DNA of 63,884 nt from contig NC_068999.1 in assembly GCF_001194135.2 (NCBI RefSeq), positions 2,272,461 to 2,336,344 on the forward strand. The letters are read 5' to 3'. The DNA comes from Octopus bimaculoides. Lineage: Eukaryota. Each line of letters opens with the position of its first letter. Positions within the stretch are counted from its first letter, which is position 1. The notes beneath the pieces are model-generated. The model was not told the DNA's origin. It ran no database searches and was given only the letters and a program-made list of their open reading frames with translations. Shown in pieces: positions 34,658 to 63,884 of the stretch. A program made the position numbers and the translations under genes.

Positions 34658-35519
34658 ATGCCTGTGTCAGTTGCTGCCAAAAATATTTGTCCAGTTATAG
34701 GCGAGGGTCCTCACTGGGAGGAAAATTCCAAATCCCTTCTATTCGTTGATATAACAACTGCAGGTTACTACAGATGGAATTCCCTGGATGGAACATGTGA
34801 GGAAATCCACGCAGGTATGTAACTCAGATCTTTTGGTTTGTTTCATTCAATATTTCTCTGTACCTCATTTCCTCTCATTCACTTCTTTCCAGATGGTACC
34901 TCTTTTTTTGCCCTTATTTACTTATCATAGGGTACTTCTTGTTCTCTTTATGTCTGTGCATCAACAGCAAAGTACAAATGTGTTGAGCAAAGACTTGGGC
35001 AGAATTGAAGTGTGCAAGAGAGAAGGCTGCACTGTTATGGACACGTGATGTGTATGAAGAAGTTCTGATTGCTTAATGTGGATGGAGTTTGGAGTTTGCA
35101 GAAGCGGGAGACCCAAGAAGACATGAGATGAAGTGGTGAAACCTAATATCAGGACTTTGGATCTTACATAGATGACAAAAGATTTGGATGACTGGCAATA
35201 TGCAGTTCTGATGAAGGCCTGTGAAAATGAGGTTCTGGAAGTGCAGTGTAGAGAGAAAGAGAGAGAAAGAAATTCAAAGAATTGCTTTGATCCAGTGATA
35301 GAATGCCTGTCATGTCTATAGGTAATGAGGGTTTGAGTCCTAGATGCACCTTCCATTTTTTTCTGTCTAGAAGAGTTTTTCAACTCAATATTTACATGCC
35401 TTTACACATGCATAAAAACTTTATGAGTGTGCTTTGAGATATTCCAAAAAAGTATTTCACATTCTTTTGAAAATTTACAAAAATTCCCATTACATCAGCA
35501 ATATATATTTATACTGACA

Positions 35520-35555
<36 letters not shown>

Positions 35556-37911
35556 CTCTTATGAAGTCTTTATATTTTCTATTCTCCAGACAGTGGTTTA
35601 GCTGGTTTCATTATCCCCCGCCAGAATGGAGGTTACCTTGTATCAAATGATGCCAGAATATTACATTTGGATTTTGCCAGTCGCAAATTGGAACCCTTCC
35701 TAACTATCCAACCTGATGAATTAGATCTCCATCTTAACGATGCTAAGTGTGACAGCAAAGGAAGATTGTGGGCAGGTAAGATGATGTCATTGAGTTGCTC
35801 TCTCAATTGTTGGTAGCAACATACACCTACATAGATCATCATCATCCTTTACCATACATTTTCCATGCTGGCATGGGTTGGTTGTTCTTACATACGGATA
35901 AACGGATAAAGAGATTGACTTACACATAGACATACATTCACACACACACCTGTATCTATTTAACTGTCTATCTATCCATCTCTCTCTCTCTCTCTCTTTC
36001 ATATATATATTCTTTTATTTGTTTCAGTCATTTGACTGCGGCCATGCTGGAGCACCGCATTTAGTTGAGCAAATCAACCCCAGGACTTATTCTTTGTAAG
36101 CCTAGTACTTATTCTATCAGTCACTTTTGCTGAACCACTAAGTTACAGGGATATAAACACATCAGCATTGGTTCTCAAACACAGACACACAATCATGTAC
36201 ATACATACATATATATATATATATAGGTTCAGGTGAATATGGTTCTTAAGTTTAAGCACCAGAATTAAGTATGGTATTATCCATACAGTTTCAAAATAAG
36301 GTGATTAAAATCGAAATACGCAACAAGGATATCNNNNNNNNNNGGTGATTAAAATCGAAATACGCAACAAGGATATCCATATATATATATATATATATAC
36401 GACGGGTTTACTGAATGGCACGAGAAACATTCTAGTGACGTTGAATATCTTACCTGGCTACCACAGTCCCCAGATCTCAATATTATTGAACATTTATGGT
36501 GCATTTTAGAAAAACAAGTAAGGAATCAATATCCTCCTCCATCATCACTACAAGAACTGGAGACTGTTTTAGCTGAAGAATGAACAAAAATTCCTTTGGA
36601 AACGATTTAAACTTTGTACGAGTCCATACCTCATAGAATTCAAGCTGTAATTACTGCCAGAGGCAGTCCTACCCCATATCAAAATAAATTTGTTTGAAAT
36701 TTTAAGGTGTTTCCATTATTTTGTCCAACCCCTGTATATATGTATTATTCCTGTATCTATTATCAGGGACCATGGGACGTTTTAACACTGTCTCTGACTT
36801 CGTAAAAGAAGCTGGATGTTTGTATCGAATTGACAAAGACCTAAAACCATTTGTCGTCAAGGAAAAAACCAATGTTTCCAATGGCATAACTTGGACAACA
36901 GATGAGAAAACCATGTTTTACACACATTCCATTCCCAGAAAAATATTTTCCTACTATTATGACATCCATTCTGGAGAGGCATGTAAGTTCCATTTTTGTC
37001 TCTAAACTTTAGACACTTCTCACTTGCAATTTTTTGTACTGACATTGGAATGATAAACGGTAAATCAACTTTTTCTTTCTTTTAACAGCAAGAGAACAAG
37101 TTGTTGTGGACTTCACTGATAAAGAATGGTCAGAGTATGGCATACCAGATGGAATGACCATGGACGTAATGGATAAGCTTTGGGTAGCAGCATTCAAAAG
37201 TAGCCGAGTGTTCCAAATTGATCCCGAAACAGGTCTGTTTTTGGCTGTTTGTATCAATATATACACGCATACATAGGAATGTGTGTGTGTGTGTGTGAAG
37301 TCACTTTTAATACTACTGTGTTTACGAGGGGGAGACAAGCACCTCCACTCAGCGAAGCCTGCATCCAGGGACATGTTTCTGAGTTTTTGCTCGTCATCAG
37401 CTTGGAGTAGCAGTCTCTCTGAGAGATTTAGAAATGTATCATTTCTAATTTTGAAATCAGTGAATGTGTTTCACTAGAATTATTATATGTTTACGAGAGC
37501 TTGACAGGCATCTTCAGCCAGCAAGTCATGTATCATTTTCAGGAGTTTACAGACAAATCTAAACCCATAGATATAGTGATGGACAAAATAAAGAAATGGG
37601 TGTATGTGTTGTGTTGTGTTGTGTTGTATTGCTTTGCATTGTGTTGTGCTGCATTTCATTGCAAAGTGAAGTGAATACAAATATGTTTCTGAACTCTTTC
37701 AGGAAAAATTCTACAGACTATCAAGTTCCCAGTGTCTGAAATTACTTCCTGCTGCTTTGGTGGACCAAATTATGATGAACTGTATGTCACATCAAGTCAC
37801 CTTGGATTAACTGATGAGGAGTTTAAAAATAACGAACCACTGGCTGGAAGTCTCTTCAAGGTCACAGAAACAGGCGCTAAAGGAAGGGCAGCATTTTCGT
37901 TCCAAGGCTAG
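34658..37911 (+). CDS. RGN: Regucalcin/SMP-30 gluconolactonase-family protein, paralog A (303 aa, most divergent copy)
   Basis: Exons 34658-34814, 35590-35775, 36767-36982, 37089-37232, 37703-37911 (912 nt, GT-AG, all introns phase 1). Motifs [51 protein letters not shown]. Confidence 0.93.
35010..35230 (+). mobile_element. RTE LINE 3' fragment in RGN-A intron 1
   Basis: Homologous by eye to 19626-19865 and 38960-39350 ([10 protein letters not shown]...RPKKT*DEVVK). Confidence 0.65.
36010..36200 (-). mobile_element. SINE family 1 3' half; other partial copies near 890-960, 9530-9600, 12255-12410, 16553-16668, 17228-17397, 18212-18490, 18750-18885, 19875-20035, 26380-26630, 31343-31411, 41835-41935, 47985-48140, 57400-57545, 63580-63725
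   Basis: Shared strings GTTTCAGTCATTTGACTGCGGCCATGCTGGAGCACCGC and CTTTTGCTGAACC.CTAAGTTAC, or the 5'-half strings. Boundaries approximate. Confidence 0.8.
36420..36736 (+). mobile_element. Tc1 element 3' end with right TIR, in RGN-A intron 2
   Basis: [15 protein letters not shown]...[14 protein letters not shown], then the TIR end ...TTTTGTCCAACCCCTG followed by TA. Confidence 0.85.
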
Positions 37912-38624
37912 CAAAACTGATTCTTTTTGCAGAATGTTCTAGATTCATGGAATCAAACAACCAGCTAAATGAATGAATAAATAAATAGCGAATGAGTATT
38001 GTTGGAGTATCATGGAATCATTTTTATCCAAAATACTTTTGTATCATTCTATCAAGCATTAAAACATATTCACATTCTATATTCACTTTTATTGCCTTTT
38101 TATTTTATCCAAATAATTTACATTTTTTGTTGTATTAACGATTATCCATTACTATAAACTTCTCTTGTTTCCTGGTTATGTGTCTGGTATAAATTGTTTC
38201 CTATTGAATCAAAACTTGTGGTTTCATATGTGGAACATCTTATAAAAAAGGATTCTTTCGTTTTCGTGCTCTTCTTCTCCACTCTTACATTATATTGAAA
38301 GCTTTCTGAATTATTATTACTGCCCTTTTATTTCTGATGAGGCCATAAAATAGTTTTTAAAAAAAAGTGTGATTGCGGAGAAATTACGCTGCTATTTCTA
38401 GCAGATTGGCTGACTGTCTAGACATTCCACCTTTTATCTCTTGTGATAGTGTTCATAATTACTTTTCTTGTCTCTGTTTATTTTTCTGTCCCCGCTCCCT
38501 GCTCTCTTTGTTTCTTCTTGCTGCTAAATCTGTAAATCTGTACATTTTACTAACACCCAACACACACACAAAATATATTTGCAAACCATTGTTGTCTTGT
38601 TAACTCACAAATAAAGTATATATC

Positions 38625-39365
38625 ATCATCATTTAATGTCCACTTTCCATGCTGGCATGGGTTGGAAGGTTTGACTGAAACTGTTAAACCGGAGGAGCTT
38701 CACCAGGTTCCAGTCTGATTTGACGTGGTCTCGATGGCTGGATGCCCGTCCTAATGCCAACCGCTCTGAGAGTGTAATGGGTGCAATTTACATAACACTG
38801 GTAACAGCCACAACTACGGTTTCCCAAGTGCCATTCACATGGCGCTGGCAATGGTCATGTCTATTGTTTCACTTGGCTTGACAGGTTTTCTCAAGCATAG
38901 CATATCTCCAAGGGTCTCAGTCACTTGTCATTGCCTCTGTGAGGCTCAACATTGAAAGATCATGCTTCACCACCTCGTCCCTCACCTCCTTGACACCCAA
39001 CAGTCAAAGATCATGCTACCAGCTGTGACTAATATTATTACAATTTCACCGGTGCCATTTACATCAGCAACAGTAAAGACTACAACTTCACGAGTCTTCT
39101 CAAGCAGAACGTATTGCCAAAGGTCTCGGTCACTAGTCATCTCTTCTGTGAGGCCCAACATTCGAAGATCGTGCTTCACCACCTCATCTCATGTCTTTCT
39201 TAGTCTACTTCTTCCACAGGTTCCCTCCACAGTTAGAGATTGGCACTTTGCACAGTCATTCTCATCCATATGCATCACATGACCACACTGGCACTCTCTT
39301 TTGTACACCATATCTGATGCCTCTTATGCCCAGTTTTCTCTCAAGACACTCTGTTGCTCTTGCAG
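38625..39365 (-). mobile_element. RTE LINE 3' fragments with the family 3' tail
   Basis: DLRMLGLTEEMTSDRDLWQY... plus the tail GGATGCCCGTCCTAATGCCAACC...CCAACCCATGCCAGCATGGAAAG ending in (ATG)n. Confidence 0.8.
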
Positions 39366-41034
39366 GGATTTTTGATTTGTCCTCTTCCCTACTTACTGAG
39401 ACTTAAAAACAAAATATTAATTTTTTTAGAGAAAGAATTTATCTAATATAAAAAAAAAACANNNNNNNNNNNNNNNNNNNNNNNNNNNNNNNNNNNNNNN
39501 NNNNNNNNNNNNNNNNNNNNNNNNNNNNNNNNNNNNNNNNNNNNNNNNNNNNNNNNNNNNNNNNNNNNNNNNNNNNNNNNNNNNNNNNNNNNNNNNNNNN
39601 NNNNNNNNNNNNNNNNNNNNNNNNNNNNNNNNNNNNNNNNNNNNNNNNNNNNNNNNNNNNNNNNNNNNNNNNNNNNNNNNNNNNNNNNNNNNNNNNNNNN
39701 NNNNNNNNNNNNNNNNNNNNNNNNNNNNNNNNNNNNNNNNNNNNNNNNNNNNNNNNNNNNNNNNNNNNNNNNNNNNNNNNNNNNNNNNNNNNNNNNNNNN
39801 NNNNNNNNNNNNNNNNNNNNNNNNNNNNNNNNNNNNNNNNNNNNNNNNNNNNNNNNNNNNNNNNNNNNNNNNNNNNNNNNNNNNNNNNNNNNNNNNTTTT
39901 CGGTTTTGGATTTGGATTTTAATGTCGTTTTCTATTCATGTGTACCGTATACACGCGTTCTATACATGTGTAATTATCATCACTGTTGGTAATAAAAATC
40001 AATCAACTATAAAAATGAAAAGAAAAAAGTGCATCTAATTTGCGATCAAATACGACACTGATTTCTGTTCCGTGTTTTTTTTCTTTTTCTCTCAATCTCT
40101 GTTTACTATTTCTCGCCCTGCCCCAACTCCATCAAGATCAACTTATGCTTTTTCACATCTTGATAAGATAAAGAACCAGACAAATACAATACTTGACAGG
40201 CACTTCATTTATTTTATCAATGCTATTTACTAACCCTTCTCTCTCAAATGTTACGACCGAATAATTAAAATAGAAACATTTATCTCTTACTCTCTCTCTC
40301 TCCCTCTCTTTGTCTTCATCTAATATATATACATACGTGTAATAAAGACAAACTGCACATTACACTACTACGACAAAAAACGGTATGTTGCTCTCTTTTT
40401 CCTTCTTTCATGGGAGTTTTTGTCTACACCGTTTCAACTTGCTAAACATAGCAACCGAATCTCCTACAGATTTTCGGAAAAAGAGGGATTTCGGACCATT
40501 CTCTCCACCTGAATTTATTATCACTAATTTCCGTAACTTTTGCATATTTCACTTTTCCTATTTTCATTTTTATATGGGAAACCAACATAAACGTAATTCT
40601 GCAAAATGTCAGGTAAAAATATGCATTTTTCAAAAAGTTATAAAGAAACAAATTGGGTGGGGGGGTGGAGCATCAACTTGTAATTCCGTGTAAAGTAAGC
40701 ATCGATATATCAAGTAGAGATCAAGTGGAGAAAGACGTCTCTGATAAGATTACAACTTATTACAGCTTGCAATGGGAGCATCGTAGATTAGTTTGATTTT
40801 CATTTATATATTCCTTTTTTTTTTTCTTTTAATTTGCCTCATCTGAGAGTCTTTTTTGTGGTGTTTTGTCTTGTTTCAATTAGCAACTTTCAAATTGTAA
40901 GCCTCGATATATCAAGAACTATAAAAGAACGAGGTATGATTAAATTCGTCCATACCACTTGCAACATAAAAACTACATTACGTGTCATAAAGTGATTCGT
41001 TTTTTTTATGTAAAACAATTTTACTTTTTATGTA

Positions 41035-41830
41035 CAGTGTACCCTCCGCTTATTCGCGGTTCGGCATTCGCGAAAACCACCGCATATTCACGGAATCGTG
41101 AATATCCTCTGCGAATTTTTTATGGCATTTTCGTGGCAATATATAGTTTTTCAAACTTTATAAGGTTAAACTAATAATACACCCTTGACAACTGAAGGTC
41201 GCTCTGATTTGAATAGGCGCGCATCATGTCGCTTGAATTTGTTTTAGATACAAGTAAACTTTTATCTTGTACCTCTTAAGATGTTTTTGTAGGGGTTTTT
41301 TTTTCTTTTTTTGGAAAACCTGCATGCAGTAGCTATCTCCGGCATTTTGTTGCGTGCTGTGTTTTTTGTAGCATGTTATTAAAGCCCTAAGATACCGCCC
41401 AAACGCCCTACACCTTCTAAAGCGTCTGGCAGTGAACCCAAGCGCCAGAAAAAGGTTATGACGCTCCATGAAAAGGCACAACTGCTGGATATGTTCCTGG
41501 AAAGTAAAAGTTATGCTGCAGTAGGTCGCCATTATGTTGTCAACGAAAGCACCAAACGCTACATGAAGAAGAACGAGGTGACGATCAGGACTACCGTAGC
41601 GAAAAGTTTCTGGGAAAGTGCCAAAAAAGATAACGATAGTGAGAAATAAGCACTTCGTAATCATGGAATCTGCCTTGGCATTGTGGATCAGTGACTGCAA
41701 GAAAAAGCATCCCCTTGAGGGGTAACATCATCCGTGAGAAAGCACAGAGTTTATGCCGACAGTTCGACAGAGGCTTAAGAGCAGAAGGCACTGAAGAACC
41801 GTCGCCAGAACCAGAACCAAAACCATTGAC
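41035..41830 (+). mobile_element. Tigger/pogo-like DNA transposon 5' fragment (CENP-B-type HTH)
   Basis: TA then left TIR CAGTGTACCCTCCGCTTATTCGCGG. ORF PKRPTPSKASGSEPKRQKKVMTLHEKAQLLDM...YAAVGRHYVVNEST, then MESALALWISDCKKKSIPL..NIIREKAQSL after a frameshift. Confidence 0.88.
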
Positions 41831-41932
41831 AAAACCGTAACAAGTCCTGGGGTTGATTTCTTCTACTAAAACCTTTAAGGTGGTACTCCAGCATGGCCAC
41901 AGTCAAATAACTGAAACTAGTAATGGAATAAA

Positions 41933-41995
<63 letters not shown>

Positions 41996-42182
41996 TACAT
42001 ACATATCTATATGTATGTATCTATCTGTATAAACATGCATACACACACTATTTCTCTCTTGTATATATATATGTGTCTGTCTGTTTGTGTGCATGTGTAC
42101 ACACACACAAATGCACATACATATGCTATATATAAATGTTTCTTTGCTTTTTATTAAATGTAATTTTGTTTTCAGAAACAAG

Positions 42183-45100
42183 ATGTCTGTATCTGTTGCT
42201 CTGAAGAATGTCTGTCAAGGAATTGGTGAAGGACCTCACTGGGAGGAACGTATTAAATCCTTGCTGTTTGTTGATGAAGAATTTGGAGGTTTCTACAAGT
42301 GGAATAGCATTGATAACACACATACCAAGTTTAATGTTGGTATGTATGTTTGTATATCTATCTACATGGGTGAATAGAAAAATTCATAGACTGACTATGA
42401 AGGAGTGATGCTAGAGCTGTGAAATTTTGCATGCAATCATTTCAACCCTTCTTATTAATAATTACATTGTTTCTTTCCAGTTAGACTGACATCTGACTGT
42501 TCAAAGATGACTTCAAAAGTAATTAGTATCGACTTCCTTTGAAAATGGACAAAATTTGGTATTGTAGTATTATCAAGTACCAGAAGAAAAACGGTTTGGC
42601 CCCCAAGGACATTCAAGCTGACATGGTTGATGCTCTGATTTCATGAACGGTGCAATAGTGGACAGCTGAATTTTTAGAGATGAAGGGAGAATTTTGAAGA
42701 TGACCCATGCTCTAGATGTCCTGCAACTGCCACCATCAAGGAAAACATTGATCATGTTCATCACGTGGTGATGGATGACAGGCAATTGATTATAAATCAA
42801 ATAACCAATTCTATTAGTATATTCTATAAGAGAGTTGAGAATATTCTGCACAATGAACTTGGCATGATGAAGGTTTCTATTCAGTGGGTACCACGTCTTC
42901 TGACACCTGATCAAAAGAGCACCAGGCTGGTCACATCATGGGAAAATCTGACATTATTTGAGGCAGATCCAGCTGGTTTCTTTGAACATTTTCTAACTTA
43001 GTAGGAGTGTTGGATTCATCACTTTGATCCAGAGACAATCTTTCAGTGAAAACATTCCTCCTCACCAACTCCAAAGTTGCCATGTCTTCTGGAGTGGAGA
43101 AGATAATCTCAGTTTTTTGGAATGCAAAAAGAATTTTGTTTATTAATTATCTTCAAAAGTGCCACACCATCAATGGAGGGTACTGTGCCAACTTGCTGAG
43201 GCAGTTAAAAAGGGTCAAGTTTCATCAGGACAATGCTCCAGCACACACAAGTCCTTGGTTTTAAAGGTTGCTGTGTGTGATTAGCTTTCAACTGGTTGGT
43301 CAACCCCTATTCACCTGGTTTGGTCCCTACTGTTCCCCAACATGAAAAATCCACTTGGCTGGGAACCAGAATCACTGATGGTGACTTCATATGCACTGTT
43401 GAACTTTTTGAGCAGCACTGTGAAATCTCCTTCACCGATGGGATCCAAGCAAAGCAATGCCAATGGAGAAAGCGTGTGGACTGCAAGATGGACTGTGTTG
43501 AAAAATAAACCTCATCTGGTCACATGCCACGATAATATCTTGGTCAGCCTGTGAACATGGCATGTCACTAATGCTGGTGCCATAAAAAATAACACCCAGT
43601 ATATTCTGTAAAGTGACTGACATTAGCAAGAGCTTCCAGCTGTACAAACTAAAGTAGACATTGGGGCACCATGGGTCCTGTCAGACAATCCAGCCCATGC
43701 CAGCACAGAAGATTGATGTTAAATGGTGTTGATGATGATGGTGATGATCAATATATCATGCTATCATATGATATAGACCTCTTTATTATAAGATTGTGTT
43801 ATATCTTTTACATCACAATATGTTTGTATCTCCTCTTATGTATATTACCAGGTGACAATGTCAGCTTCATCATACCTCGTGAATCTGGTGGTTATCTCGT
43901 ATCATATAAGACCCAACTCGCTGAATTTGACTGGGAGAGTCAACAGATGAAACCATTCCTCAATGTGGAACCAGATAAACCAGGAAATTGCTTCAATGAT
44001 GGTAAATGTGACAGCTCTGGCAGACTTGTGGCAGGTTTGTATTTGTTTTATGTATGAAACTGTCTTTCATAGTTTTTTTTTATTATTTTCAGTGTTGTTG
44101 TTGTTGTTTAACCCCAGGTCATCTCTTACTGGATTGTAACTTCAGAGTTTGATCAGTGACACTGCTCAACGTACCTAACTTCTCACTCTGAAGGTACTAA
44201 CCATTATTCTATCTTGGGCAGTTTTGGTATTTACAATGGCCAGTCTATGAGGTTTCCTGGTGAGAATGAAATCTATCTGCCTTGTGTGTTTGCTAGAATG
44301 GTAGGTGATGAGGTGTCTGGTCACTTTCTGGAAGTGGGTGTTGCAAATTGTTTGATTAGTTCCATGATAGAACTCCAGGAGTCTTGCATCCTCACCATAT
44401 TCATTCTCCTCATGGACATCACAGTAGCCATCGTGTTTTTGGCCACTATGTCCATTAAAGTCACCATTAAAGGCTCTCACAGAAACACTTCTGTTTGTAT
44501 ATTCGTACATACCTTCATGTATGGTGATTGTTCCATTGTCATAGATGCTCAGCATCTTCTGCCATTTCTGACTTTCCACCCATGACCTCTCAGACGACTA
44601 TTCAGTCTTGCCATTTTGTAACTGTGCATATTTCCAGCTGGTTAGGTCTGCACGTGTTGCCACTCTTCCAATTCCACAAGACTGTCAGTGAAACCAATGG
44701 TAGCCATAATTCACACACACACACACACATGTAGATATATATATATCTTGTAAATGCTTTGGGGTGCATTATCATTTTTGTTTCTGAAGTGTTAGGAGAG
44801 TTTCAGTATTAGACCTCTCCATCTAATTTTTTGCTTAACCCCAAGTCAGCTCTGGTCTAGTTCCCCTTTCATTGTCAAGTGTGCATAAATTCTGAAATAA
44901 TAGAATGTAATGTAAAGGAAATTTGGCTGCTATTTCTAGCTGTTAGACTTGTCACTAGATTTCAATGTGGACAGAATAACATACTCTAACTTTTCTCCTT
45001 TTAGGTACAATGAAAATATTCACAGGCACAGCTGAAATGGCTGAAGCTGGACGTCTATATCGAATTGATAAAGATCTCTCGGTCAATGCCATCAAAGACA

Positions 45101-46796
45101 AGATCAATATATCTAATGGTATGGCATGGACAGCAGATGACAAAACCATGTTCTACACCCATTCTCTTCCTAAAAAAGTATTTTCTTATGACTATGACAT
45201 TTCAACCGGAGAAATCTGTAAGTATTGTCAGTTTTANNNNNNNNNNNNNNNNNNNNNNNNNNNNNNNNNNNNNNNNNNNNNNNNNNNNNNNNNNNNNNNN
45301 NNNNNNNNNNNNNNNNNNNNNNNNNNNNNNNNNNNNNNNNNNNNNNNNNNNNNNNNNNNNNNNNNNNNNNNNNNNNNNNNNNNNNNNNNNNNNNNNNNNN
45401 NNNNNNNNNNNNNNNNNNNNNNNNNNNNNNNNNNNNNNNNNNNNNNNNNNNNNNNNNNNNNNNNNNNNNNNNNNNNNNNNNNNNNNNNNNNNNNNNNNNN
45501 NNNNNNNNNNTATTAGTAATTTGTGAGATGTTGGAAAGCTTAACAGAGATTGTCCATGCAATCAGAAGACAAATTTCTTAATAACAGTTTAAAACATGGA
45601 ATCCAAACTAAAATAAATTTAATTAACCCTTCCAATGTTGTCATGGAAATATTCATTTTAACAATAAATATTCTGTTTGCTTCTTTAGCCAGAGAACAAG
45701 TGGTTATTGATTTTGAAGGCAAAGAACTCCACGAGTATGGGATACCAGATGGAATGACAATTGATTTAAATGACAAAATATGGTTAGCTAGCCATTATAG
45801 TAGCAAAGTATTCCAGATTGACCCAGAAACAGGTAGAGAAACTTTATTTCTTTACTCAAAAGCCTTGGTTGATGAGACAATAGAGTTCTCCCTTTCTCCC
45901 TTTCCCTACCAAAAATTCCTGGCAAACCTCCTTCAAATCATATTCTGTTATCCACGCTGTGTCTGGATAAAAGATGAGGTGGTCACAGCTGGACCAGCTC
46001 TGATCGTGGATAGATGTGCCTGATCAGGGCTTATCAACAACTGATAATTCATTCTCATGAAATACTTTGCAAACAACTCATCCATGTGGTGGAAGAAAAG
46101 GACAATTAAGAGCAGCTAATTAAGAGAGAGATTGGTGTACATCAGATGCCTATCATCATCCTCACCACCACTTCTGCCACCACCATCACCACCACTTCTG
46201 CTGCCACTGCCACAGCTGCCATCACTCCCACTGCCACTCATTACTGCCATCATCATCATCATTATTGTCCAAACAAACAAACAAGCAGATCACTTTTGTG
46301 TGCTGCAGATGAAGATGTGTTTGTTAATACCGAAAAGAAAAGGTATTTAGTATGACTGCTAGATGAACTTAGTAGTTGGCCATGTCTACCTTGGATAAAG
46401 ACTTCATATATAAGCACGGATGGCTGAGTGGATAGAAACACAGACTACCAGCAGTGAGATGAGTGGTTCACATCCCAGCACTGGTAACAGATTATGCTTG
46501 TGGCTATGACACTAAACTCCTGTGCCTATGTTTTTCAATTTTGGACAATTCTTTTTTACTTTTACCCATTTTAATAACCATTTTCAGGTAAAATTCTCAG
46601 CTCAGTCAAGTTTCCTACACGTCAAGTCACTTCCTGTTGTTTTGGAGGCCCAAACTATGACGAACTTTATGTGACATCGAGAGCCAATAACTTAACAGAA
46701 AAACAGTTGCAAAATGAAGAGAAACTTGCTGGAAGTGTGTTCAAGGTTACGGAGTTGGGGGCAAAAGGTAAAGCAGCTCCCGTCTTTCAGGGATAG
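42183..46796 (+). CDS. RGN: Regucalcin/SMP-30 family protein, paralog B (301 aa)
   Basis: Exons 42183-42339, 43852-44034, 45005-45217, 45689-45832, 46588-46796 (906 nt, no stops). Motifs [47 protein letters not shown] near 46890. Confidence 0.93.
42395..43556 (+). mobile_element. Decayed mariner element in RGN-B intron 1
   Basis: DRQLIINQIT...ILHNELGMMKVSIQWVPRLLTPDQK, WIHHFDPET, HQDNAPAH. Confidence 0.9.
44175..44560 (-). mobile_element. RTE LINE AP-endonuclease fragment in RGN-B intron 2
   Basis: GDFNGH...RLLEF...ICNTHFQK...ITY...QIDFIL motifs. Confidence 0.85.
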
Positions 46797-47976: not shown

Positions 47977-49029
47977 TATTTGTATATATATACAACGGGC
48001 TTCTTTCAGTTTCCGTCTACCAAATCCACTCACAAGGCGTTGGTCGGCCCAAGGCTATAGTAGAAGATACTTGCCCAAGGTGCAATGCAGTGGACTGAAC
48101 CCAGATGCATGTGGTTGTAAGTAAGCTACTTACCACACAGNNNNNNNNNNNNNNNNNNNNNNNNNNNNNNNNNNNNNNNNNNNNNNNNNNNNNNNNNNNN
48201 NNNNNNNNNNNNNNNNNNNNNNNNNNNNNNNNNNNNNNNNNNNNNNNNNNNNNNNNNNNNNNNNNNNNNNNNNNNNNNNNNNNNNNNNNNNNNNNNNNNN
48301 NNNNNNNNNNNNNNNNNNNNNNNNNNNNNNNNNNNNNNNNNNNNNNNNNNNNNNNNNNNNNNNNNNNNNNNNNNNNNNNNNNNNNNNNNNNNNNNNNNNN
48401 NNNNNNNNNNNNNNNNNNNNNNNNNNNNNNNNNNNNNNNNNNNNNNNNNNNNNNNNNNNNNNNNNNNNNNNNNNNNNNNNNNNNNNNNACACACACACAC
48501 ACACACACACAAGTGCGCGCGCGTATATATAATTTAGTTTTCTGCAAGGAAGAGAATCCTTGTATTTGGTCAAAAAAAGGTAAGTTGTTCTCTCTTTTTC
48601 TCATTAATCTTCCTTCGTGATCCTTCGAAGGAGTTTCTCTTTATGCAATGTTTCAACTTGCTAGAAATAGCAACCAAATCTCCTTCAAATCACAATTTAT
48701 TGTTATAGAAAAAGCAAGGCTACATTACTTATTGTAAGTCTCAATATATCAAGTATCATAATAGAATAATTGGATTGTCACATCTGGAACGTCTCTGAGG
48801 GCAAGTCTTTTCAATATAGCTTGAAATTTGAGTAAATAACACTATTCTATGGACCTTAGCAGAATTCGTTTTTCGTGTAACAATCTCGTATTTTGCACAT
48901 TCCCTTTGATTAATTCGACCAATCAGAGAACCTTATGCGTTCATTTTGCCTGCTAGAAATAACAACTAGATTTCCTTTGACTTATACTGTACCTATTCAG
49001 AAATGATGGCTAATGCTACATTAGATAAT

Positions 49030-51780: not shown

Positions 51781-52445
51781 ATGTCTGTGTCTGTTGTCTT
51801 GAAGAATCCCTGTCAAAAAACTGGAGAAGGACCTCATTGGGAGGAAAGTACTAAATCCTTGCTGTTTGTTGATATTGAACCTGGAGGTATACACAAGTGG
51901 AATTCTGTAGACAACACCCACACCAAGTTTAATACTGGTATGTATATATGTATGTGTGTGTGTGTACTTAGTCATGTATGAATGGATGGATTGTGCGACT
52001 AGTTGGATGATTGTATGCTTGTGATGATCAAGCACTATTCATTATCATAGGATATCAATCTCTTATACAATTATCGTATGATATCAATATTTTATTACTT
52101 GATATTAATCCATTTGTCATGTTGTATAATCAAAATATGTGTTTTTAATCGTCTCTTGTATGTTTAATTTACCAGATGGAAAGGTTAGTTTTATCGTTCC
52201 TTCGGAATCTGGTGGTTATATCGTATCCAAAGACACAAAACTTGCTGGTTTTGACTGGGAGAGTCAACAGGTGAAACCATTCATTGATGTTGAACCAGAC
52301 AAACCAAAGAATAGATTCAATGATGGAAAATGTGACAGCTCTGGCAGACTGTGGGCAGGTTTGTATTTCTTTGTTTTACACATGAGACACATATACAATC
52401 AAGAGATGATGCAGATATCTTCTTGATATCCTGTTGCATATTTTG

Positions 52446-52485
<40 letters not shown>

Positions 52486-52495
52486 NNNNNNNNNN

Positions 52496-52534
<39 letters not shown>

Positions 52535-54770
52535 CAGTGTGTGAATTATTTTTTGTACATAGCTGCACACAGAAATATGAATGACATTCACTGTGAAATT
52601 TTATCTGGATGAACAAATTTCTCCTTTAGACTTTCATTGTGAAAAGCAGACCATCAGACACTTGTCTTTCAGTTTGATTTCATCTCCTCAGTGATAGATA
52701 CCACCTTCCACCTTTAGTGCTTGACAGAAACTTCTGTTCCTATGTAAAAATTGGCAAGCAAAACATTTGTTGATGTCTGCTGAAGTGTGCAAAGCTGGAA
52801 TTAATTCAATGCAAGCTTATTAAATAGTAAGAATCATAAAAAAAAAAAAAGAAATATTTTATTCTTTACTGAGCCACAAACCTCTTGCTCTTTTCTGTTG
52901 CATTTGCTAGACTCTACATTCTAAATTGCTCCAGAATGTTGTCTGTGTGTATTTAAACGTCTCTACTCTCCATGCTATACTCTACATTCTTATCACTCTT
53001 GAGAAATTAAGTGAACCCGTGATTAGCCAGTCAATTACTTATCAACACTTTTGTACACAAAACTTTCTTGGATTGCAGAGATTTGTGAAAAGATTTACTG
53101 TTTAAATCTTTCAATTTTTAGGTACAATGGAGGAATTCACGGGTGAACTAAAACCGACTGAAGCTGGACATTTATACCGACTTGATAAAGACCGATCACT
53201 GCATACCGTCAAAGATAAGATCAATATATCTAATGGTTTGGCCTGGACATCAGATGACAAAACCATGTTCTACACCCATTCTACTCCAAGAAAAGTGTTT
53301 TCTTATGACTATGACGTTTCTAAAGGAGAAATCTGTAAGTTTTGTCAGTCTGAAGTGTTTCTTTGTTTAGAAATTTGAAAATTGAAGCAAGGATTTTCAA
53401 TTGGAATTGACAAGTGTATTACAAAATAACATGTTTTCATTTACAGTCCTATATTTAAGAGATGAGGAATTATGTACATTATTTACATTATTTACATTTG
53501 ACGGATATTTGCAATTATTCTTGAAATAATTTTTATTTCGTTCATCAATTTGAATATAATCTCATACAAATACAGTGTGGTCTCATATTCATAAAATGTG
53601 AGCTGTTGAACATTTCGAACACTTTTCACCAGTGAAATCAGATGTATCCACAAAAGATTTCACAACCATTAACTGCAGTAAACAGCTTTATATATCAAAC
53701 CAATTTTTGTTGTGGAATGTCATGTTTAGATCTATTTTTTATTGAGATATGTTAAGTGTATTGTGACAATGTGGCATGCAGGAAATATCAATTCTAACTT
53801 TTGTTTGATATTTACATCATTTCTAGAATAGCCATGAAATTTAATTTTACAGGCTTAACTGAGATTATCCATGTAATTTACAAATTTCTTGCTAAAAGTT
53901 TAAAACACTCAAAAGACAATAAATTTAATTAATCCTTAAAATGTTGTCATGGAAACATTTTATTTTAGCAATAAATATTTTCTGTTTCTTTCTTTAGCCA
54001 GAGAACAAGTGGTTATTGATTTTGAAGGCAAAGAATTCCATGAATTTGGGATACCCGATGGAATGGCAATTGATTTGAATGACAAGATATGGCTGGCTTG
54101 CTTCTCCAGTAGCCAAGTATTCCAGATTGACCCAGAAACAGGTACAGAAAATGTTATTTCTTTAATTAAACGTCTCACTCATTGAGCCTGTCAGAGTCTG
54201 TATTTGTTGTGGCTACTCTAGTCTAGTCTAACCTCATGGCCTAGTGGTAAAGATTTTACACTCGCAATCACAAGATAGTGGTTTCAATTCCCAGACTGGG
54301 CTACGTGCTGTGTTTTCAAGCAAAAAACTTTATTTTATGTTGCTTTAGTCCACTCAACTGTTCAGGGGAAGTGCTGTAATCTCAGTCACTTATGCACCAT
54401 GGAAGCTGGGTCACCAGCCACATAAATCCTAGGTTTGCTGGCAATGACTCCAATCAATGTGATTGATTGAAATAATGAAGATAATATTGAAGGTAGTAGG
54501 TTGTATAGTTTTCAGTTTTGGACAATTCCTTTGACTTATTTAATTTTAAAACTAATTTCAGGTAAAATTCTGACGTCAGTCAAATTTCCCACAAGTCAAA
54601 TCACTTCCTGTTGTTTTGGAGGCCCAAACTATGACGAGCTGTATGTGACATCGAGTGCTTCCTTTTTGACAGAAGAACAGTTACAAAATGAAGAGAAATT
54701 TGCCGGAAGTGTTTTCAAGGTCACCGGGTTGGGAGCTAAAGGGAAAGCAGCTCCTAACTTTCAAGGATAG
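51781..54770 (+). CDS. RGN: Regucalcin/SMP-30 family protein, paralog C (301 aa, retains canonical NRFNDGK)
   Basis: Exons 51781-51937, 52176-52358, 53122-53334, 53998-54141, 54562-54770 (906 nt). Same motifs and exon sizes as paralog B. Confidence 0.94.
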
Positions 54771-55345: not shown

Positions 55346-55540
55346 ATACTCTTTTACTTGTTTCAGTCATTTGACTGTGGCCATGCTGGAGCGCCGCCTT
55401 TAGTCAAGCAAAGCGACTCCAGGAAGCCTAGTACTTATTCTATCGGTCTCTTTTGCCCAGCCGCTAAGTTACGGGGACGTAAACACACCACCATTGGGTG
55501 TCAAGCGATGGTAGAGGGACAAACACAGACACACAAACAC

Positions 55541-55598
<58 letters not shown>

Positions 55599-56261: not shown

Positions 56262-56321
<60 letters not shown>

Positions 56322-57704: not shown

Positions 57705-60525
57705 CTATCCCTGAAAGACGGGAGCTGCTTTACCTTTTGCCCCCAACTCGGTAACCTTAAACACACTTCCAGCAAGTTTCTCTTCATTTTGCAACTGATT
57801 CTCCGTCAAACGGCTGGCACTTGATGTCACATAAAGTTCGTCATAGTTTGGGCCTCCAAAACAACAGGAAGTGACTTGACTGACAGGAAACTTGACTGAT
57901 GTTAGAATTTTACCTGAAATTGTTTTTAAAATTGAAACGAAGAATTAAAAAGATATCTTATTTTTGAATTTTTCTTTTGCAAGAATTCTGACCTGCAGCC
58001 TGGAATTGTATTTCAAGTAAGTCATACTAATTACAAAACCTTTAAACACTGGGCCTCTTCAGTTTTTGATTAAATTCCCAGAAATTTTTCCATTTCTATT
58101 TTTCTTCTTAATGGTTTTAATTTATTCAACTAATTTTTTTTTTCTTTTGTATGTTATCATATTGTCTTATCTCTATGTTAAACATGTCCACACATTGTTT
58201 TGCTGCTGTATCAGCTTGCATTGGTTTTATTGTATTTTATTTTTTCATTTCATCTGACTGTTTTTGTTGTTGCCTACATAAGAACAAATGTATTTATTTT
58301 ATGATTATAGAATGTGATGTGAGGGAGATATGGCTGTTATTTTTGTTAGATAAAATGATCATGAGAAATAGAGATTCTTTCGTCTTGTGTCACACAGTTT
58401 TTGAGTAAAGAAATAAAACATTTTATACCTGTTTCTGGATCAATCTGGAATACTTTGCCACTAGAGAAGCAAGCCAACCATATCTTATCATTTAAATCAA
58501 TTGTCATTCCATCTGGCACCCCATATTCGTGGAGTTCTTGGCCTTCAAAATCAATAACCACTTGTTCTCTGGCTAAATATGGAAACAGAAAATATTTACT
58601 ATTAAAATAAAATATCTCCATGACAACAGTAGAAGAATTGTCTATTGAATTCCATGTTTTAAATTGATAGCTGGCTTCAAATTTCTCAATGCAAAAGCAT
58701 GTTTACATGTGAATGTATATATTTATGTGTGAGTATACTGAGGATTGAACTCACTCTGCACCATATTCACTTTTAATTACCAATTAATAAAATTGCAAAT
58801 TACAAGATTTCTGCTTTGTGTTTTTGGGACAGAATTAATTAAATAACAATTGTCCTAATCAATAAGGGGGTAATTTAATTTTTTCTCCTTATTGATTCTC
58901 ACATTTTACGTAAATGTGACCCTTTCATATTTGTTTACCATGTGGACCTCTGTTTTAGGATAAATACACTGAGTCCCTTTGTGTTATAAGAAGTGACTAA
59001 AAAGAGTTGGCAGCAGGAAGGATGTCTGATCATAAATCACTATCTTAGAAAATCTCTCCAAGCAATGCCAGCCTGGAAAAATGGAAGTAAGATACCGATA
59101 AAGGCCTGGTGGGTGTAGAGGAAGAAAATTATTTCAAGAATAAATAATTGTAAATACAACAGAATTAATTTTAATGAATTGAATTAAATTTTATTAAGTT
59201 TTTGTGATAGAGCAGCAGACAAAAATACCTTGTGCTATTTTGAAACTTGCCTTTAGGTTTTAAACCAAAATCCTTGGATCTTTACCAATATCTAATTAAA
59301 AAAACACTTAAGACTGACAATACTTACAGATTTCTCCGGTAGAAACATCATAGTCATAAGAAAATACTTTTCTAGGAAGCGTATGGGTGTAGAACATGGT
59401 TTTATCATCTGCTGTCCATGTCATACCATTAGATATATTGATCTTGTCTTTGATGGCATTGACCGAGAGATCTTTATCAATTCGATAAAGATGTCCAGCT
59501 TCAGTTATTTCAAGTTTGTCCTTGATTGTCTTCATGGTACCTAAAATTAGGAAAGTTGAAAAAAAAAAATAGTAACATTTCCTGAAAATCTTAGAAGTGC
59601 ACAAATATTTTGTGTCTGGTTAATCTAACTTCAAATTATAACCTGTATTGCCTTTCAAAATAGAAGAATGTTGTTTTAAGCATTTTTGGTCATAGGTTTA
59701 CTTGCTTGTCGGATATGACCTGGAGGTAAACAACAACAACATCCACAACAACATCATTGAAAATTTAAAAAATACAGAAGAAAGTTTCAATTAATAAATT
59801 CAATTGAAACAGCTTTTGATTAAACTACTGATATATGATAACTACAGGTATATAATTATGTAAAACAAATGTGGAATGACCCTAGCTGTAATGTTGGCTT
59901 CAAAGAAAATTCTCAAAAAGGTATTTGTGTTCAAACCCAGAATTTTGCTAAGAATGGCATGGATTTTCCAAATATGGCATTTCAAAATTTCAATAAATAG
60001 TAATAATAATAAACAATATATTCAAATACAATATTGTTACAAGTAATACTATAAGTATCACTGGACTTTGGAGCTAAGCCAAAAAATGTTTGTTCTGGTA
60101 TGAAAATTGATAAACAAAAAAATTATTTATTTGTGTGAAAGCTAACCAGACTTGGATTAAAATAACAATGTACAGGAAACAAAAGACAAGCTTTTCTCAT
60201 GCATAAACAATGAAATACAAACCTGTCCACAGTCGACCATAACTGTCACATTTACCGTCGTTGAATACATTTTCTGGTTTATCGGATTCTATTTTGATGA
60301 AAGGTTTTAATTCTTGAGTCTCCCAGTCAAAATCAGCAAGTTGGGCAAAACAGGCAACGATGTAACCACCAGACTCTCGAGGAATAATGAAGCTTACGTA
60401 TCCATCTAATAAATTTGACACAAAACAAGAGAAGATGAAAATATTTGGGGATATAAGCCTTTGTACATATCGTGATGGAAACATCATGTTTCACTTCATA
60501 CACACACATATTCATACACACATAT

Positions 60526-60578
<53 letters not shown>

Positions 60579-60754
60579 ACTGACCAAGATGACGTCCAGT
60601 TCTACGTTTTCTGTGGCTGTAATTACAAACCTCATTTAATTGCCTTTGTCTTATCTCTCATTCTTTTATTTGACATCAACCATTTGTCAAATCTACCATA
60701 ATTAGCCTTCAACACACAGTTACATACACACACACACACACGGATGAATATCCC

Positions 60755-60798
<44 letters not shown>

Positions 60799-61229
60799 CA
60801 CATGCACACACTAACACACACACTCACTCATACACACACATAAATATACGTACGTAGAAACATCAAAGAAATCTGATTTTAGGAATTTATCAAATCTGCC
60901 ATAATTAGCCTTCCACACACACACACACACACACTGTAACGAGTGGTACCCAACATACTCAGTGACTGACTTGAACTCTCTCAAGAAGAACTGAAATTGA
61001 ACACACACATACATAGACACACACACACACACACACACACAGATGTACAAAAATACAGATATACATACATACCAGCTTTAAACTTGGTGTGTGTGTAGTC
61101 AACAGAATTCCATTTATGTAAATGTCCAGTTTCTACATCAACAAACAGCAAGGATTTGGTGCTTTCCTCCCAATGTGGTCCTTCCCCAGATTTCTGGCAG
61201 ACATTCTTCAAGGCAACAGACACAGACAT
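57705..61229 (-). CDS. RGN: Regucalcin/SMP-30 family protein, paralog D (301 aa), convergent with C
   Basis: Minus-strand exons 61229-61073, 60405-60223, 59540-59328, 58572-58429, 57913-57705 (906 nt, GT-AG, intact). Same motifs as the other copies. Confidence 0.93.
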
Positions 61230-63070: not shown

Positions 63071-63203
63071 GAAGTGAGCTTGAATGTTAAAACTTAGTGT
63101 GCATGCATGGCAGAGTTTGAGGCCAATTTATGCCAAACAGCTTCACTCTGTGGGCTTCAGCTTTGTTACTATGGGACAACAGTCTGGATACTTATTGATC
63201 AGA

Positions 63204-63294
<91 letters not shown>

Positions 63295-63734
63295 TGTAAA
63301 TGCGTGCAATTCCTGCCATTCTAATGAGGGCAATGTCCTTTTTTGAAGCATGTCAAGGAATATATGAATAAGCTATCTCCATGATAACCATTATCTAGAT
63401 TCTTATTAGGTATTGTTATTTAACACCAGACACAGATACAGTCCATAGTCCATAGACATATTATCAATGACACACCAAATGAGATCAGCATCGCTTTCTT
63501 AAAAGTAAGTATAAAAACTAGATAGATGGCTGGATGGACAGATGGAGGGAAGGACAAACAGAGAGATAGATGACAAGCGTCCACACACTTTCTGTCTACC
63601 AAATTTCCCTCACAAAGCACTGCGCAATCTGAAACTATGATAGAAGACATTTGCCCAAGGTTCCATGGAATGGGATCAAACCTGAAGCCATGTGGTTGCA
63701 AAGAGACCATCTTAATCACATATTCATATATAAA

Positions 63735-63884
63735 GGAGAAAAGAATATAAAACAAACAAAACATCTCTTAAATTACTTTTATTTATTTCATTATTAATTT
63801 TATATAACATATCATTATTAATTTTATATAACATATCTATGAACAAACATAATTATAGAACCTGTGATCTTTATATTACAATGT
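63735..63884 (-). other. 3' UTR / poly(A) region of a probable fifth regucalcin paralog lying beyond the window
   Basis: The reverse complement (acattgtaatataaagatcacaggttctataattatgtttgttcatagat...aataatgaaataaataaaagtaatttaagagatgttttgtttgttt) aligns with the 3' UTRs of paralogs C (about 54795-54900) and B (about 46819-46920). It is followed by the same SINE head that follows B and D. Confidence 0.72.

What the first reader, a model, noticed from the sequence alone, without database searches (positions are those of the whole stretch)
34658..63884. Expanded regucalcin/SMP-30 lactonase cluster: metal ligands fixed, active-site loops hypervariable
Seen: four intact paralogs all keep the metal-site residues (E in GEGP, N in ND, N in SNG, D in PDG, equivalent to human E18/N103/N154/D204). 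Their differences concentrate in short loops. After GTM: [49 protein letters not shown]. After FVD: ITTA, EEFG, IEPG, VETG. After WxA: AFKSS, SHYSS, CFSSS, CFSSG. After LYVTS: SHLG, RANN, SASF, SASR. Established: SMP-30 is a six-bladed propeller lactonase that also hydrolyses organophosphates, the segment after GTM forms the lid over the substrate cavity, and squid DFPase uses the same fold and E/N/N/D metal site. Inference: this is a cephalopod lineage-specific set of cytosolic (no signal peptide) lactonase/phosphotriesterase enzymes diversifying in substrate range, possibly for dietary toxin or xenobiotic detoxification. I cannot tell from here whether it has been described.
Basis: partly seen in the sequence, partly recalled or inferred. 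Interest (0 to 1): 0.85.

Follow-up and report, generated by a model that had tools for sequence, protein, structure and literature searches.

The report
Octopus tandem regucalcin (SMP30) gene cluster
Four intact, already annotated copies of the metal-dependent lactonase regucalcin/SMP30 lie side by side in Octopus bimaculoides, as part of a six-gene array specific to the genus Octopus; their catalytic core is unchanged, but the substrate pocket differs between copies, and three copies have lost the sugar-binding Arg/Glu pair.

Summary
The window is Octopus bimaculoides chromosome CM046619.1. It carries four complete five-exon regucalcin/SMP30 genes: A, B and C on +, D on -. All splice sites are GT-AG, and every N gap lies in an intron or between genes. 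The catalytic residues are intact.

- The array has six genes. F and E lie just past the window end.
- It is specific to Octopus, not to cephalopods. The loci fetched from Argonauta and Sepia hold one gene each.
- Other molluscs have their own multi-copy sets.
- The variable loops all sit on the active-site face and map onto published cavity residues of mammalian SMP30.
- Their dN/dS is about 0.5-1.1, not significantly above 1, and their variability tracks family-wide variability (rho 0.55).
Arg101, 89% conserved family-wide, and lid Glu121 are kept in C, E and F. They are replaced in A (His/Phe), B (Cys/Ile) and D (Val/Thr), and the replacement class is shared by the O. sinensis orthologues.
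- Cavity residues are 81% identical between orthologues but 34% between paralogues.
- Gene conversion also shapes the loops.

The genes are already annotated, and any detoxification role is untested. Interest is moderate to low.

The parts
34658..37911 (+). Gene A, regucalcin/SMP30 paralogue, 303 aa. Exons 34658-34814, 35590-35775, 36767-36982, 37089-37232, 37703-37911. It is the oldest and most divergent copy. Pocket residues: His at the R101 position (35730-35732), and the lid [12 protein letters not shown] (36775-36810) has Phe at the E121 position.
   Evidence: Identical to UniProt A0A0L8FYD7. About 60% identical to B-D. Synonymous sites are saturated against B-F. Branches before Argonauta in the NJ tree (99% bootstrap). 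dN/dS 0.24 against the O. sinensis copy.
42183..46796 (+). Gene B, 301 aa. Exons 42183-42339, 43852-44034, 45005-45217, 45689-45832, 46588-46796. Pocket residues: Cys at the R101 position (43989-43991), lid KIFTGTAEMAE (45013-45045), His at the Y219 position.
   Evidence: Contained in the annotated A+B fusion model P0130. The O. sinensis orthologues P0004 and P0122 have Asp at the R101 position.
45511..45859 (+). Gene-conversion tract covering B exon 4 and flanking intron. It is 97.1% identical to paralogue F over 350 bp, against 75-90% elsewhere in the two genes. Its left edge abuts the N gap at 45237-45510.
   Evidence: Exon 4 of B is 99.3% identical to F, against 91.5% to its own O. sinensis orthologue.
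51781..54770 (+). Gene C, 301 aa. Exons 51781-51937, 52176-52358, 53122-53334, 53998-54141, 54562-54770. It keeps the canonical pocket: Arg at the R101 position (52313-52315) and an EE start to the lid (53130-53162).
   Evidence: 100% identical to NCBI 'regucalcin [Octopus bimaculoides]' P0001. AF2 model pLDDT 96.2.
57705..61229 (-). Gene D, 301 aa. Exons 61229-61073, 60405-60223, 59540-59328, 58572-58429, 57913-57705. Pocket residues: Val at the R101 position (60266-60268), lid KTIKDKLEITE (59500-59532), Val at the I202 position.
   Evidence: Identical to XP_014785794.1 (P0129). The O. sinensis orthologue also has Val at the R101 position.
43046..43264 (+). Mariner-type transposase fragment inside B intron 1. 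It is not part of the gene.
   Evidence: Pfam Transposase_1 PF01359, E 2.8e-6.
41458..41649 (+). Short ORF between A and B that public gene models use to fuse A and B into a 688/740-aa product. The fusion is probably a read-through artefact.
   Evidence: P0130 contains A, this ORF and B. One search lists a 688-aa product with two SGL hits.

Best explanation
Window 34658-63884 holds four of the six genes of an Octopus-specific tandem array of regucalcin/SMP30-family enzymes. These are six-bladed beta-propeller, divalent-metal-dependent lactonase-type hydrolases, and they appear cytosolic.

How the array evolves (shown).
- It evolves by birth and death. A is an old duplicate. B-G radiated after the Argonauta split and before the O. 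bimaculoides/O. sinensis split.
- G was found only in O. sinensis.
- A carries two frameshifts in the O. sinensis assembly.
- B was re-duplicated in O. sinensis.
- Exon-scale gene conversion occurs between copies.

How the proteins work.
- By homology to solved SMP30 structures, Glu16, Asn151 and Asp205 (C numbering) hold the metal at the bottom of the central cavity, and Asn101/Asp102 position the substrate.
- The cavity walls and entrance are built from top-face loops. These include the lid after GTM and the loops after FVD, WxA and LYVTS.
- These top-face loops are what differ between copies.
- The copies fall into two pocket classes. C, E and F (plus O. sinensis G) keep Arg101 and Glu121, which bind sugar hydroxyls in mammalian SMP30. 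A, B and D have replaced both with His/Phe, Cys(Asp)/Ile and Val/Thr.

Inference. The copies are all active enzymes whose substrate preferences have diverged. C, E and F remain sugar-lactone-like, while A, B and D take less polar or otherwise different substrates. The divergence arose through a near-neutral burst of pocket change after duplication, followed by purifying selection on each copy's own pocket.

Not known: the physiological substrates. A detoxification role is speculation.
For: - Family and fold.
- Complete ORFs with conserved intron positions in 14 genes from four species.
- Gene-wide purifying selection: dN/dS 0.11-0.24 for five orthologue pairs, pooled 0.18.
- Catalytic residues are invariant.
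- Array structure and synteny with O. sinensis, ending at the same WD40 gene.
- Tree with 100% bootstrap for every orthologue pair.
- Published cavity residues (PMC3551927) are variable in 14/15 columns against 71/286 elsewhere (p=1e-7).
- Those cavity residues are 81% identical between orthologues but 34% between paralogues. The rest of the protein is 91% and 81%.
- Top-face loops take 2.2 times more nonsynonymous change than bottom-face loops after duplication (p=1.4e-5), and 1.84 times after speciation (p=0.004).
- Arg101 is present in 108/122 other family members but replaced in A, B and D. The O. sinensis orthologues share the replacement class (Val in D of both species; His in A and the A pseudogene; Cys versus Asp in B).
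- Arg101 and Glu121 co-vary family-wide (odds ratio 5.4, p=0.006).
- GULO was not found in O. bimaculoides, so the classical ascorbate-pathway role may not constrain these genes (PMC6582580).
Against: - No activity or expression data exist for any copy.
- dN/dS in the pocket is not significantly above 1. The pattern is therefore compatible with relaxed constraint followed by drift.
- Loop variability largely mirrors what is seen across all regucalcins (rho 0.55).
- Copies can be lost. A has frameshifts in O. sinensis, and no G was found in the O. bimaculoides loci examined.
- Gene conversion breaks the single-tree assumption of my counts.
- Cavity membership was mapped by alignment to mammalian residues, not measured on coordinates.
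- The alignment within the lid is ambiguous by one position.
Confidence: 0.6

Rival explanations
1. Redundant dosage duplicates. The array is a neutral or dosage-driven tandem amplification of one enzyme. The top-face loops differ only because they are the least constrained part of the fold, and substrate range is essentially unchanged.
For: - Pocket dN/dS is at or below about 1 and not significant.
- Paralogue variability correlates with family-wide variability.
- Most reader-loop positions are also highly variable in 122 other regucalcins.
- Copy number differs between sister species, and one copy is disrupted.
- Gene conversion homogenises exons.
Against: - Arg101 is 89% conserved family-wide, yet it is replaced in three copies, and the O. 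sinensis orthologues also lack Arg there.
- Pocket residues are 81% identical between orthologues against 34% between paralogues.
- Post-speciation pocket dN/dS is 0.43-0.48, so each copy's own pocket is under constraint.
- Top-face loops evolve about twice as fast as equally exposed bottom-face loops.
Confidence: 0.28
2. Adaptive, positively selected detoxification array. The pocket loops are under recurrent diversifying selection to hydrolyse dietary toxins, xenobiotic lactones or organophosphate-like compounds.
For: - Pairwise pocket dN divided by gene-wide dS reaches 1.4-2.2 for pairs involving B or D (my ratios from the values).
- The lid shows 23 nonsynonymous and 7 synonymous changes on post-duplication branches.
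- The youngest duplicate pair, O. sinensis B/B2, is 99% identical over 9.7 kb but has 6 nonsynonymous and 0 synonymous changes in the lid. Its exon-3 nonsynonymous divergence is 5.8 times the flanking-intron rate (p=8e-5).
- A, B and D have lost the polar sugar-binding pair.
Against: - Pooled tests are not significant (p=0.28 and 0.71).
- The B/B2 signal could be conversion from an unsampled copy, because extra SGL fragments exist in that region.
- There is no evidence on substrates, tissues or induction.
- No paper linking cephalopod regucalcins to detoxification was found.
Confidence: 0.1
3. Non-enzymatic role. The copies act as calcium-binding or regulatory 'regucalcin' proteins, or as recruited structural proteins, and the pocket changes reflect loss of enzyme function.
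For: Regucalcin is described in mammals as a Ca2+ regulator (cited in PMC6582580). The sugar-binding residues are lost in three copies.
Against: All metal ligands and Asn103/Asp104 are strictly kept in every copy of both species. This would not be expected if catalysis were dispensable.
Confidence: 0.04

Closest known systems
Mammalian regucalcin / SMP30 gluconolactonase (PDB 3g4e, 4gn7, 4gnb)
   Same: - 40-41% identity, and TM 0.94-0.95 between the AF2 model of C and the crystal structures.
- Same length and the same metal ligands (E18, N154, D204).
- Same Asn103/Asp104.
- A lid loop after GTM.
- Copies C, E and F also keep Arg101 and Glu121.
   Different: - A six-gene tandem array here (four of them in the window), where I recall mammals having a single regucalcin gene (my recollection, not checked here).
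- A, B and D lack Arg101 and Glu121.
- The lid is one residue shorter in B-G and lacks the Pro124-Ala125 motif.
- GULO, the next enzyme of the ascorbate pathway, was not found in O. bimaculoides (PMC6582580).
Multi-copy regucalcin-like genes of other molluscs (e.g. Batillaria, Mactra, Pecten, Mercenaria, Crassostrea, Gigantopelta)
   Same: - Several regucalcin-like genes lie on the same contig or chromosome.
- Some paralogues also lack Arg101 and have divergent lids: P0053 Gigantopelta, P0078 Mactra, P0103 Pinctada, P0117 C. virginica, P0076/P0160 Liolophura.
   Different: - These are independent expansions. The Octopus copies B-G form one clade, with Argonauta and Sepia outside it.
- I did not examine the structure of those arrays.
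Squid DFPase (Loligo vulgaris; PDB 1e1a, 1pjx)
   Same: Six-bladed propeller with equivalent E/N/N/D positions (PMC3551927). Foldseek probability 1.0.
   Different: - Only 16-17% identity and TM about 0.75.
- No sequence hit at E<0.001.
- DFPase has an open cavity without a lid, and its fourth Asn is a metal ligand.
- The octopus genes are regucalcin-type and are not DFPase orthologues.
Firefly luciferin-regenerating enzyme (PDB 5d9b)
   Same: It is a member of the same family that has taken on a non-sugar substrate. E 4.6e-44 and TM 0.91.
   Different: 36% identity. There is no evidence that the octopus copies act on luciferin-like compounds.

Membership tests
SMP-30/gluconolactonase/LRE-like (Pfam PF08450, SGL) | Full-length match to the SGL profile above the gathering score (26.3 bits) | tested here: met
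   A 231, B 234.8, C 264.4 and D 254.5 bits, covering profile positions 1-2 to 244-246 of 246.
SMP-30/gluconolactonase/LRE-like (Pfam PF08450, SGL) | Six-bladed beta-propeller fold | tested here: met
   The AF2 model of C has pLDDT 96.2 and pTM 0.93. It shows 24 strands in six four-stranded blades, with the N-terminal strand closing blade 6. TM 0.94-0.95 to 3g4e/4gn7/4gnc. Only C was modelled.
Regucalcin/SMP30 subfamily | Metal ligands Glu18, Asn154 and Asp204, plus the catalytic-site Asn103 | tested here: met
   Present in A-D at E16, N151/153, D205/207 and N101/102. Also present in F, in the O. sinensis copies B, B2, C, D, E, F and G, and in the Argonauta and Sepia genes (N-terminal Glu not assessable in O. 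bimaculoides E and O. sinensis C, whose exon 1 was not recovered).
Regucalcin/SMP30 subfamily | Closest relatives are animal regucalcins | tested here: met
   Best database hits are mollusc, brachiopod and annelid 'regucalcin' proteins at 45-53% identity. The best solved structures are human and mouse regucalcin.
Regucalcin/SMP30 subfamily | Sugar-hydroxyl-binding Arg101 and lid Glu121, which underlie gluconolactonase / L-gulonate lactonisation specificity in mouse SMP30 | tested here: inconclusive
   Met in C (and in F and E outside the window). Not met in A (His, Phe), B (Cys, Ile) or D (Val, Thr). These residues define substrate specificity rather than family membership, and 14/122 other members also lack Arg101.
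Regucalcin/SMP30 subfamily | Metal-dependent lactonase activity | not testable with these tools
   This needs recombinant protein and enzyme assays.
DFPase (squid diisopropyl-fluorophosphatase) | Sequence-level orthology to Loligo DFPase, and an open lid-less cavity | tested here: not met
   No DFPase chain at E<0.001 in the PDB sequence search. 16-17% identity and TM about 0.75. An 11-12-residue lid segment is present after GTM.

The most novel reading that the evidence does not exclude
After GULO and the ascorbate pathway became irrelevant, octopuses turned their single regucalcin into an array of specialised hydrolases. Paralogues A, B and D have lost the sugar-binding Arg101/Glu121 pair, carry species-conserved non-polar or altered pockets, and would have acquired new non-sugar substrates such as lipophilic lactones, dietary or microbial toxins, or phosphotriesters. 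The lid exon would be the recurrent target of selection, as hinted by the O. sinensis B/B2 pair.
Probability: 0.2. Interest if true: 0.6.

Novelty: new member of a known kind. Interest (0 to 1): 0.3.

Why it matters
If the copies differ in substrate range, the array would be a compact natural experiment. It would show how the lid and top-face loops of the SMP30 propeller set specificity. That scaffold is of interest for lactone and organophosphate hydrolysis and has been used in enzyme design. The array would also add a metabolic or detoxification family to the known octopus-specific gene expansions. As it stands, this is an annotated enzyme family that has duplicated in tandem, as it has in other molluscs. 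The practical value of this work is a corrected gene map: six genes, with the A+B fusion model probably wrong. It also gives a short list of pocket residues to test.

Tried and rejected
I went through database ids instead.
- An A orthologue was sought in other species with a second protein search. None is annotated. An apparently frameshifted copy was found only by reading O. sinensis DNA.
- Positive selection: pooled Nei-Gojobori and parsimony-based counts gave no omega significantly above 1. Many small-set dS values saturate to NaN, so per-pair pocket omegas are unreliable. PAML and HyPhy were not available.
- 3-D distances to the metal could not be computed because model coordinates are not exposed. 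I used published residue lists and strand order instead.
- Six literature searches found no description of cephalopod regucalcin expansion apart from the structural paper found. Absence in this library does not prove that none exists.
- Transcript evidence: no transcriptome-derived (Logan) sequences occur in the Octopus clusters. Expression therefore remains open.
- Five of six ORFs in the introns, intergenic spacers and upstream flank gave no Pfam hit. One was a mariner fragment.
- Window 1-34657 showed only microsatellite-rich sequence and no further SGL copy.

Full report
**Where the window comes from.**
- Copy C is 100% identical to NCBI 'regucalcin [Octopus bimaculoides]'.
- Window positions 41781-63884 match GCA_001194135.2 chromosome CM046619.1 base for base, N runs included.
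- Extrapolating from that offset, the whole window would correspond to about 2,272,461-2,336,344 on that chromosome.

- A tblastn scan with a crude copy-C protein found exactly four sets of five exons in 34658-63884, and nothing comparable in 1-34657.
- An exhaustive search of GT/AG junctions gave one consistent model per gene. It was re-derived by exact peptide matching.
- Each gene has five coding exons. All four introns are phase 1, at the same positions in every copy, and use GT-AG.
- The proteins are 303 aa (A) and 301 aa (B, C, D).
- All six N runs lie in introns or between genes. The closest, 45237-45510, starts 20 nt after the exon-3 donor of B.
- Each protein aligns with human SMP30 from end to end without a missing block, so the gaps do not hide coding sequence.
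- A is about 60% identical to B, C and D, which are 78-80% identical to each other.
- The clustering of differences is not chance. Among B, C and D, 19 of 24 reader-loop columns vary against 66 of 277 elsewhere (p=9e-8).

**What the genes are.**
- All four match Pfam SGL (PF08450) end to end at 231-264 bits.
- The best solved relatives are human and mouse regucalcin/SMP30 (E 3e-58), followed by firefly luciferin-regenerating enzyme and bacterial lactonases. Squid DFPase is not hit by sequence.
- An AlphaFold2 model of C is very confident (pLDDT 96.2, pTM 0.93) and shows six four-stranded blades.
- Foldseek gives TM 0.94-0.95 to 3g4e/4gn7/4gnc, and only about 0.75 at 16-17% identity to DFPase.
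- These are therefore true regucalcins and not DFPase relatives.

**The array is larger than the window.**
- On the chromosome, C(+) and D(-) are followed by F(-), a 301-aa gene that starts about 330 bp past the window end. Next come E(+) and a WD40 gene.
- Exon 1 of E probably sits in an assembly gap.
- Public models fuse A and B into one 688/740-aa product through a short intergenic ORF. The two halves are complete genes, so I regard the fusion as an artefact.

**Comparison with other cephalopods.**
- O. sinensis has the same array in the same order and orientation, ending at the same WD40 gene.
- Its members are, in order: an A copy with a 2-bp deletion in exon 2 and a 1-bp deletion inside the SNG codon triplet; G, an extra copy with no O. 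bimaculoides counterpart in the loci I read; B; B2; C; D; F; and E.
- Several exon fragments also occur there.
- Argonauta hians has one gene in a 23-kb locus. Sepia pharaonis has one gene spread over 39 kb.
- Neither protein search returned a second annotated Argonauta or Sepia paralogue among its 120 best hits; cluster listing added only >=90%-identical members.
- A neighbour-joining tree of the coding sequences puts Sepia outside, then A, then Argonauta, then a radiation of G, C, F, E, B and D. Every O. bimaculoides/O. sinensis pair has 100% bootstrap.
- Synonymous divergence agrees with this order. It is about 0.25 between orthologues, 0.4-0.6 among B-F, 1.4 to Argonauta, and saturated for A.
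- The expansion is therefore specific to the Octopus lineage, not to cephalopods.
- Many other molluscs have several regucalcin-like genes on one contig. Tandem multiplication of this family is thus not unusual in the phylum.

**Do the variable loops line the cavity?**
- Model coordinates are not exposed, so I used two proxies.
- First proxy: residues named in the mouse/human SMP30 structure paper (PMC3551927).
  - Metal ligands: E18, N154, D204.
  - N103 contacts substrate. It is a ligand only in DFPase, PON and Drp35.
  - Substrate contacts: R101, N103, E121.
  - Opposite wall: C16, I202, Y219.
  - Entrance: R15, P35, P57, R101, E120-P124, D265, G266.
  - Lid: the loop after GTM.
- Second proxy: strand order in the model. 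All four segments are B-to-C loops of blades 1, 3, 5 and 6, on the same face as the D-to-A loops that carry the other cavity residues.
- Of the 15 alignable cavity columns, 14 vary among B-D against 71 of 286 elsewhere (p=1e-7).

**Is this diversifying selection?**
- All genes are under purifying selection overall. dN/dS is 0.11-0.24 in five orthologue pairs and 0.18 pooled. It is 0.24 for A against the frameshifted O. sinensis copy.
- Parsimony counts on the tree give the following:

| Site set | Post-duplication branches | Post-speciation branches |
|---|---|---|
| Cavity set, own synonymous rate | 0.66 | 0.43 |
| Cavity set, gene-wide synonymous rate | 1.11 (p=0.28 for >1) | 0.48 |
| Rest of the protein | 0.30 | 0.19 |

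- Top-face loops accumulate 2.2 times more nonsynonymous change than bottom-face loops after duplication (p=1.4e-5), and 1.84 times after speciation (p=0.004). The excess is therefore not simply 'relaxed surface loops'.
- No region reaches omega significantly above 1.
- Per-column variability among the paralogues also correlates with variability across 122 other regucalcins (Spearman 0.55).
- The supportable statement is this: the pocket changed at about the neutral rate after duplication, and has since been held in place.
- Consistent with that, cavity residues are 81% identical between orthologues but only 34% between paralogues. The rest of the protein is 91% and 81%.

**The sharper signal.**
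- Most reader-loop positions vary in all regucalcins, but Arg101 does not. It is Arg in 108 of 122 other sequences.
- In the array it is Arg in C, F and E (and O. sinensis G, Argonauta, Sepia and squid). It is His in A, Cys in B (Asp in both O. sinensis B copies) and Val in D of both species.
- The same three copies have also lost lid Glu121 (Phe, Ile/Ala/Thr, Thr/Lys). C, E and F keep it.
- Arg101 and Glu121 co-vary across the family (odds ratio 5.4, p=0.006).
- In mouse SMP30 these two residues, together with Asn103, bind the sugar hydroxyls.
- Similar losses occur in paralogues of Gigantopelta, Mactra, Pinctada, Crassostrea, Liolophura and ticks. This is a recurrent way for the family to diverge, not an octopus novelty.
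- GULO was not found in O. bimaculoides (PMC6582580). That may have removed the constraint to lactonise L-gulonate.

**Gene conversion.**
- Exon 4 of B is 99.3% identical to exon 4 of F, but 91.5% identical to its own orthologue.
- The tract is 350 bp at 97.1% identity, window 45511-45859, and runs into the gap.
- B's 'SHYSS' loop, with His at the Y219 position, is therefore a recent copy of F's loop.
- Exons 1 of C, E and F are also unusually alike.
- Pocket elements thus move between copies, and single-tree analyses should be read with care.

**A hint from the youngest pair.**
- O. sinensis B and B2 are 99.0% identical over 9.7 kb, with no differences in exons 1, 2 and 4.
- Exon 3 has 13 differences: 10 nonsynonymous and 3 synonymous. 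Six nonsynonymous and no synonymous changes fall in the lid.
- Flanking introns differ at about 1% (p=8e-5).
- Several B states are unique among all sampled copies.
- This could be selection on the lid, or conversion from an unsampled fragment.

**Verdict.**
- The genes are annotated members of a well-known family, and the array is an Octopus-lineage instance of a pattern common in molluscs.
- The evolutionary claim (hypervariable, diversifying, cephalopod-wide) and the physiological claim (detoxification) are not established.
- The most useful new points are:
  - the six-gene map;
  - the two pocket classes defined by Arg101/Glu121;
  - the contrast between orthologue conservation and paralogue divergence of the pocket;
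  - the role of gene conversion.

Noticed in passing
L003:10001-17625 and L010:10001-17736 (O. sinensis B and B2): A very recent segmental duplicate, 99.0% identical over 9.7 kb. Exons 1, 2 and 4 are identical, but exon 3 (the lid exon) has 13 differences: 10 nonsynonymous and 3 synonymous, of which 6 nonsynonymous and 0 synonymous fall in the lid. Flanking introns differ at about 1% (p=8e-5). This could be selection or conversion from an unsampled copy.
   Followed up: partly
L006:1-3846 (O. sinensis, upstream of gene G): The orthologue of window gene A carries a 2-bp deletion in exon 2 and a 1-bp deletion inside the SNG metal-ligand motif, and NCBI calls only a 140-aa product. Yet dN/dS against O. 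bimaculoides A is 0.24. It is either a recent pseudogene or an assembly error.
   Followed up: partly
window 34658-46796: Public gene models (688 aa in the current annotation; 740-aa XP_014785744.1) fuse genes A and B through a short ORF at 41458-41649. Both halves are complete five-exon genes with their own start and stop codons, so the fusion looks like an annotation artefact.
   Followed up: partly
just beyond window end; L005:6001-10791 and L001:10991-15056: Two more array members lie there. F (301 aa, - strand) starts about 330 bp past base 63884. E (+ strand) lacks exon 1, probably because it is hidden in the N run at L001:9571-9870. A conserved WD40-repeat gene follows.
   Followed up: yes
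window 43046-43264 (+), also 42765-43001: A mariner-type transposase fragment (Pfam Transposase_1, E 2.8e-6) inside intron 1 of gene B. The neighbouring ORFs look like the same decayed element.
   Followed up: partly
window 48993-49820 (-): A 275-aa ORF between genes B and C with no Pfam hit. It may be a decayed retroelement, but its origin was not resolved.
   Followed up: partly
window 1-34657: No further regucalcin copy and no convincing gene. The sequence is dominated by microsatellites (TG/CA, TA/TC runs), eight N gaps and scattered transposon-like ORFs.
   Followed up: partly
L003:18442-18597, L003:23721-23837, L010:22749-22907: Isolated exon-5-like, exon-4-like and exon-1-like regucalcin fragments lie between O. 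sinensis B, B2 and C. They indicate decayed or unannotated further copies.
   Followed up: no
C residues 71-73, window 52228-52236; same position in A, B, D: The blade-2 B-to-C loop (KDT in C, YKT in B, CFA in D, NDA in A) is among the most often replaced stretches of the protein: 7.5 nonsynonymous changes at residue 72 and 6.0 at residue 71.
   Followed up: partly
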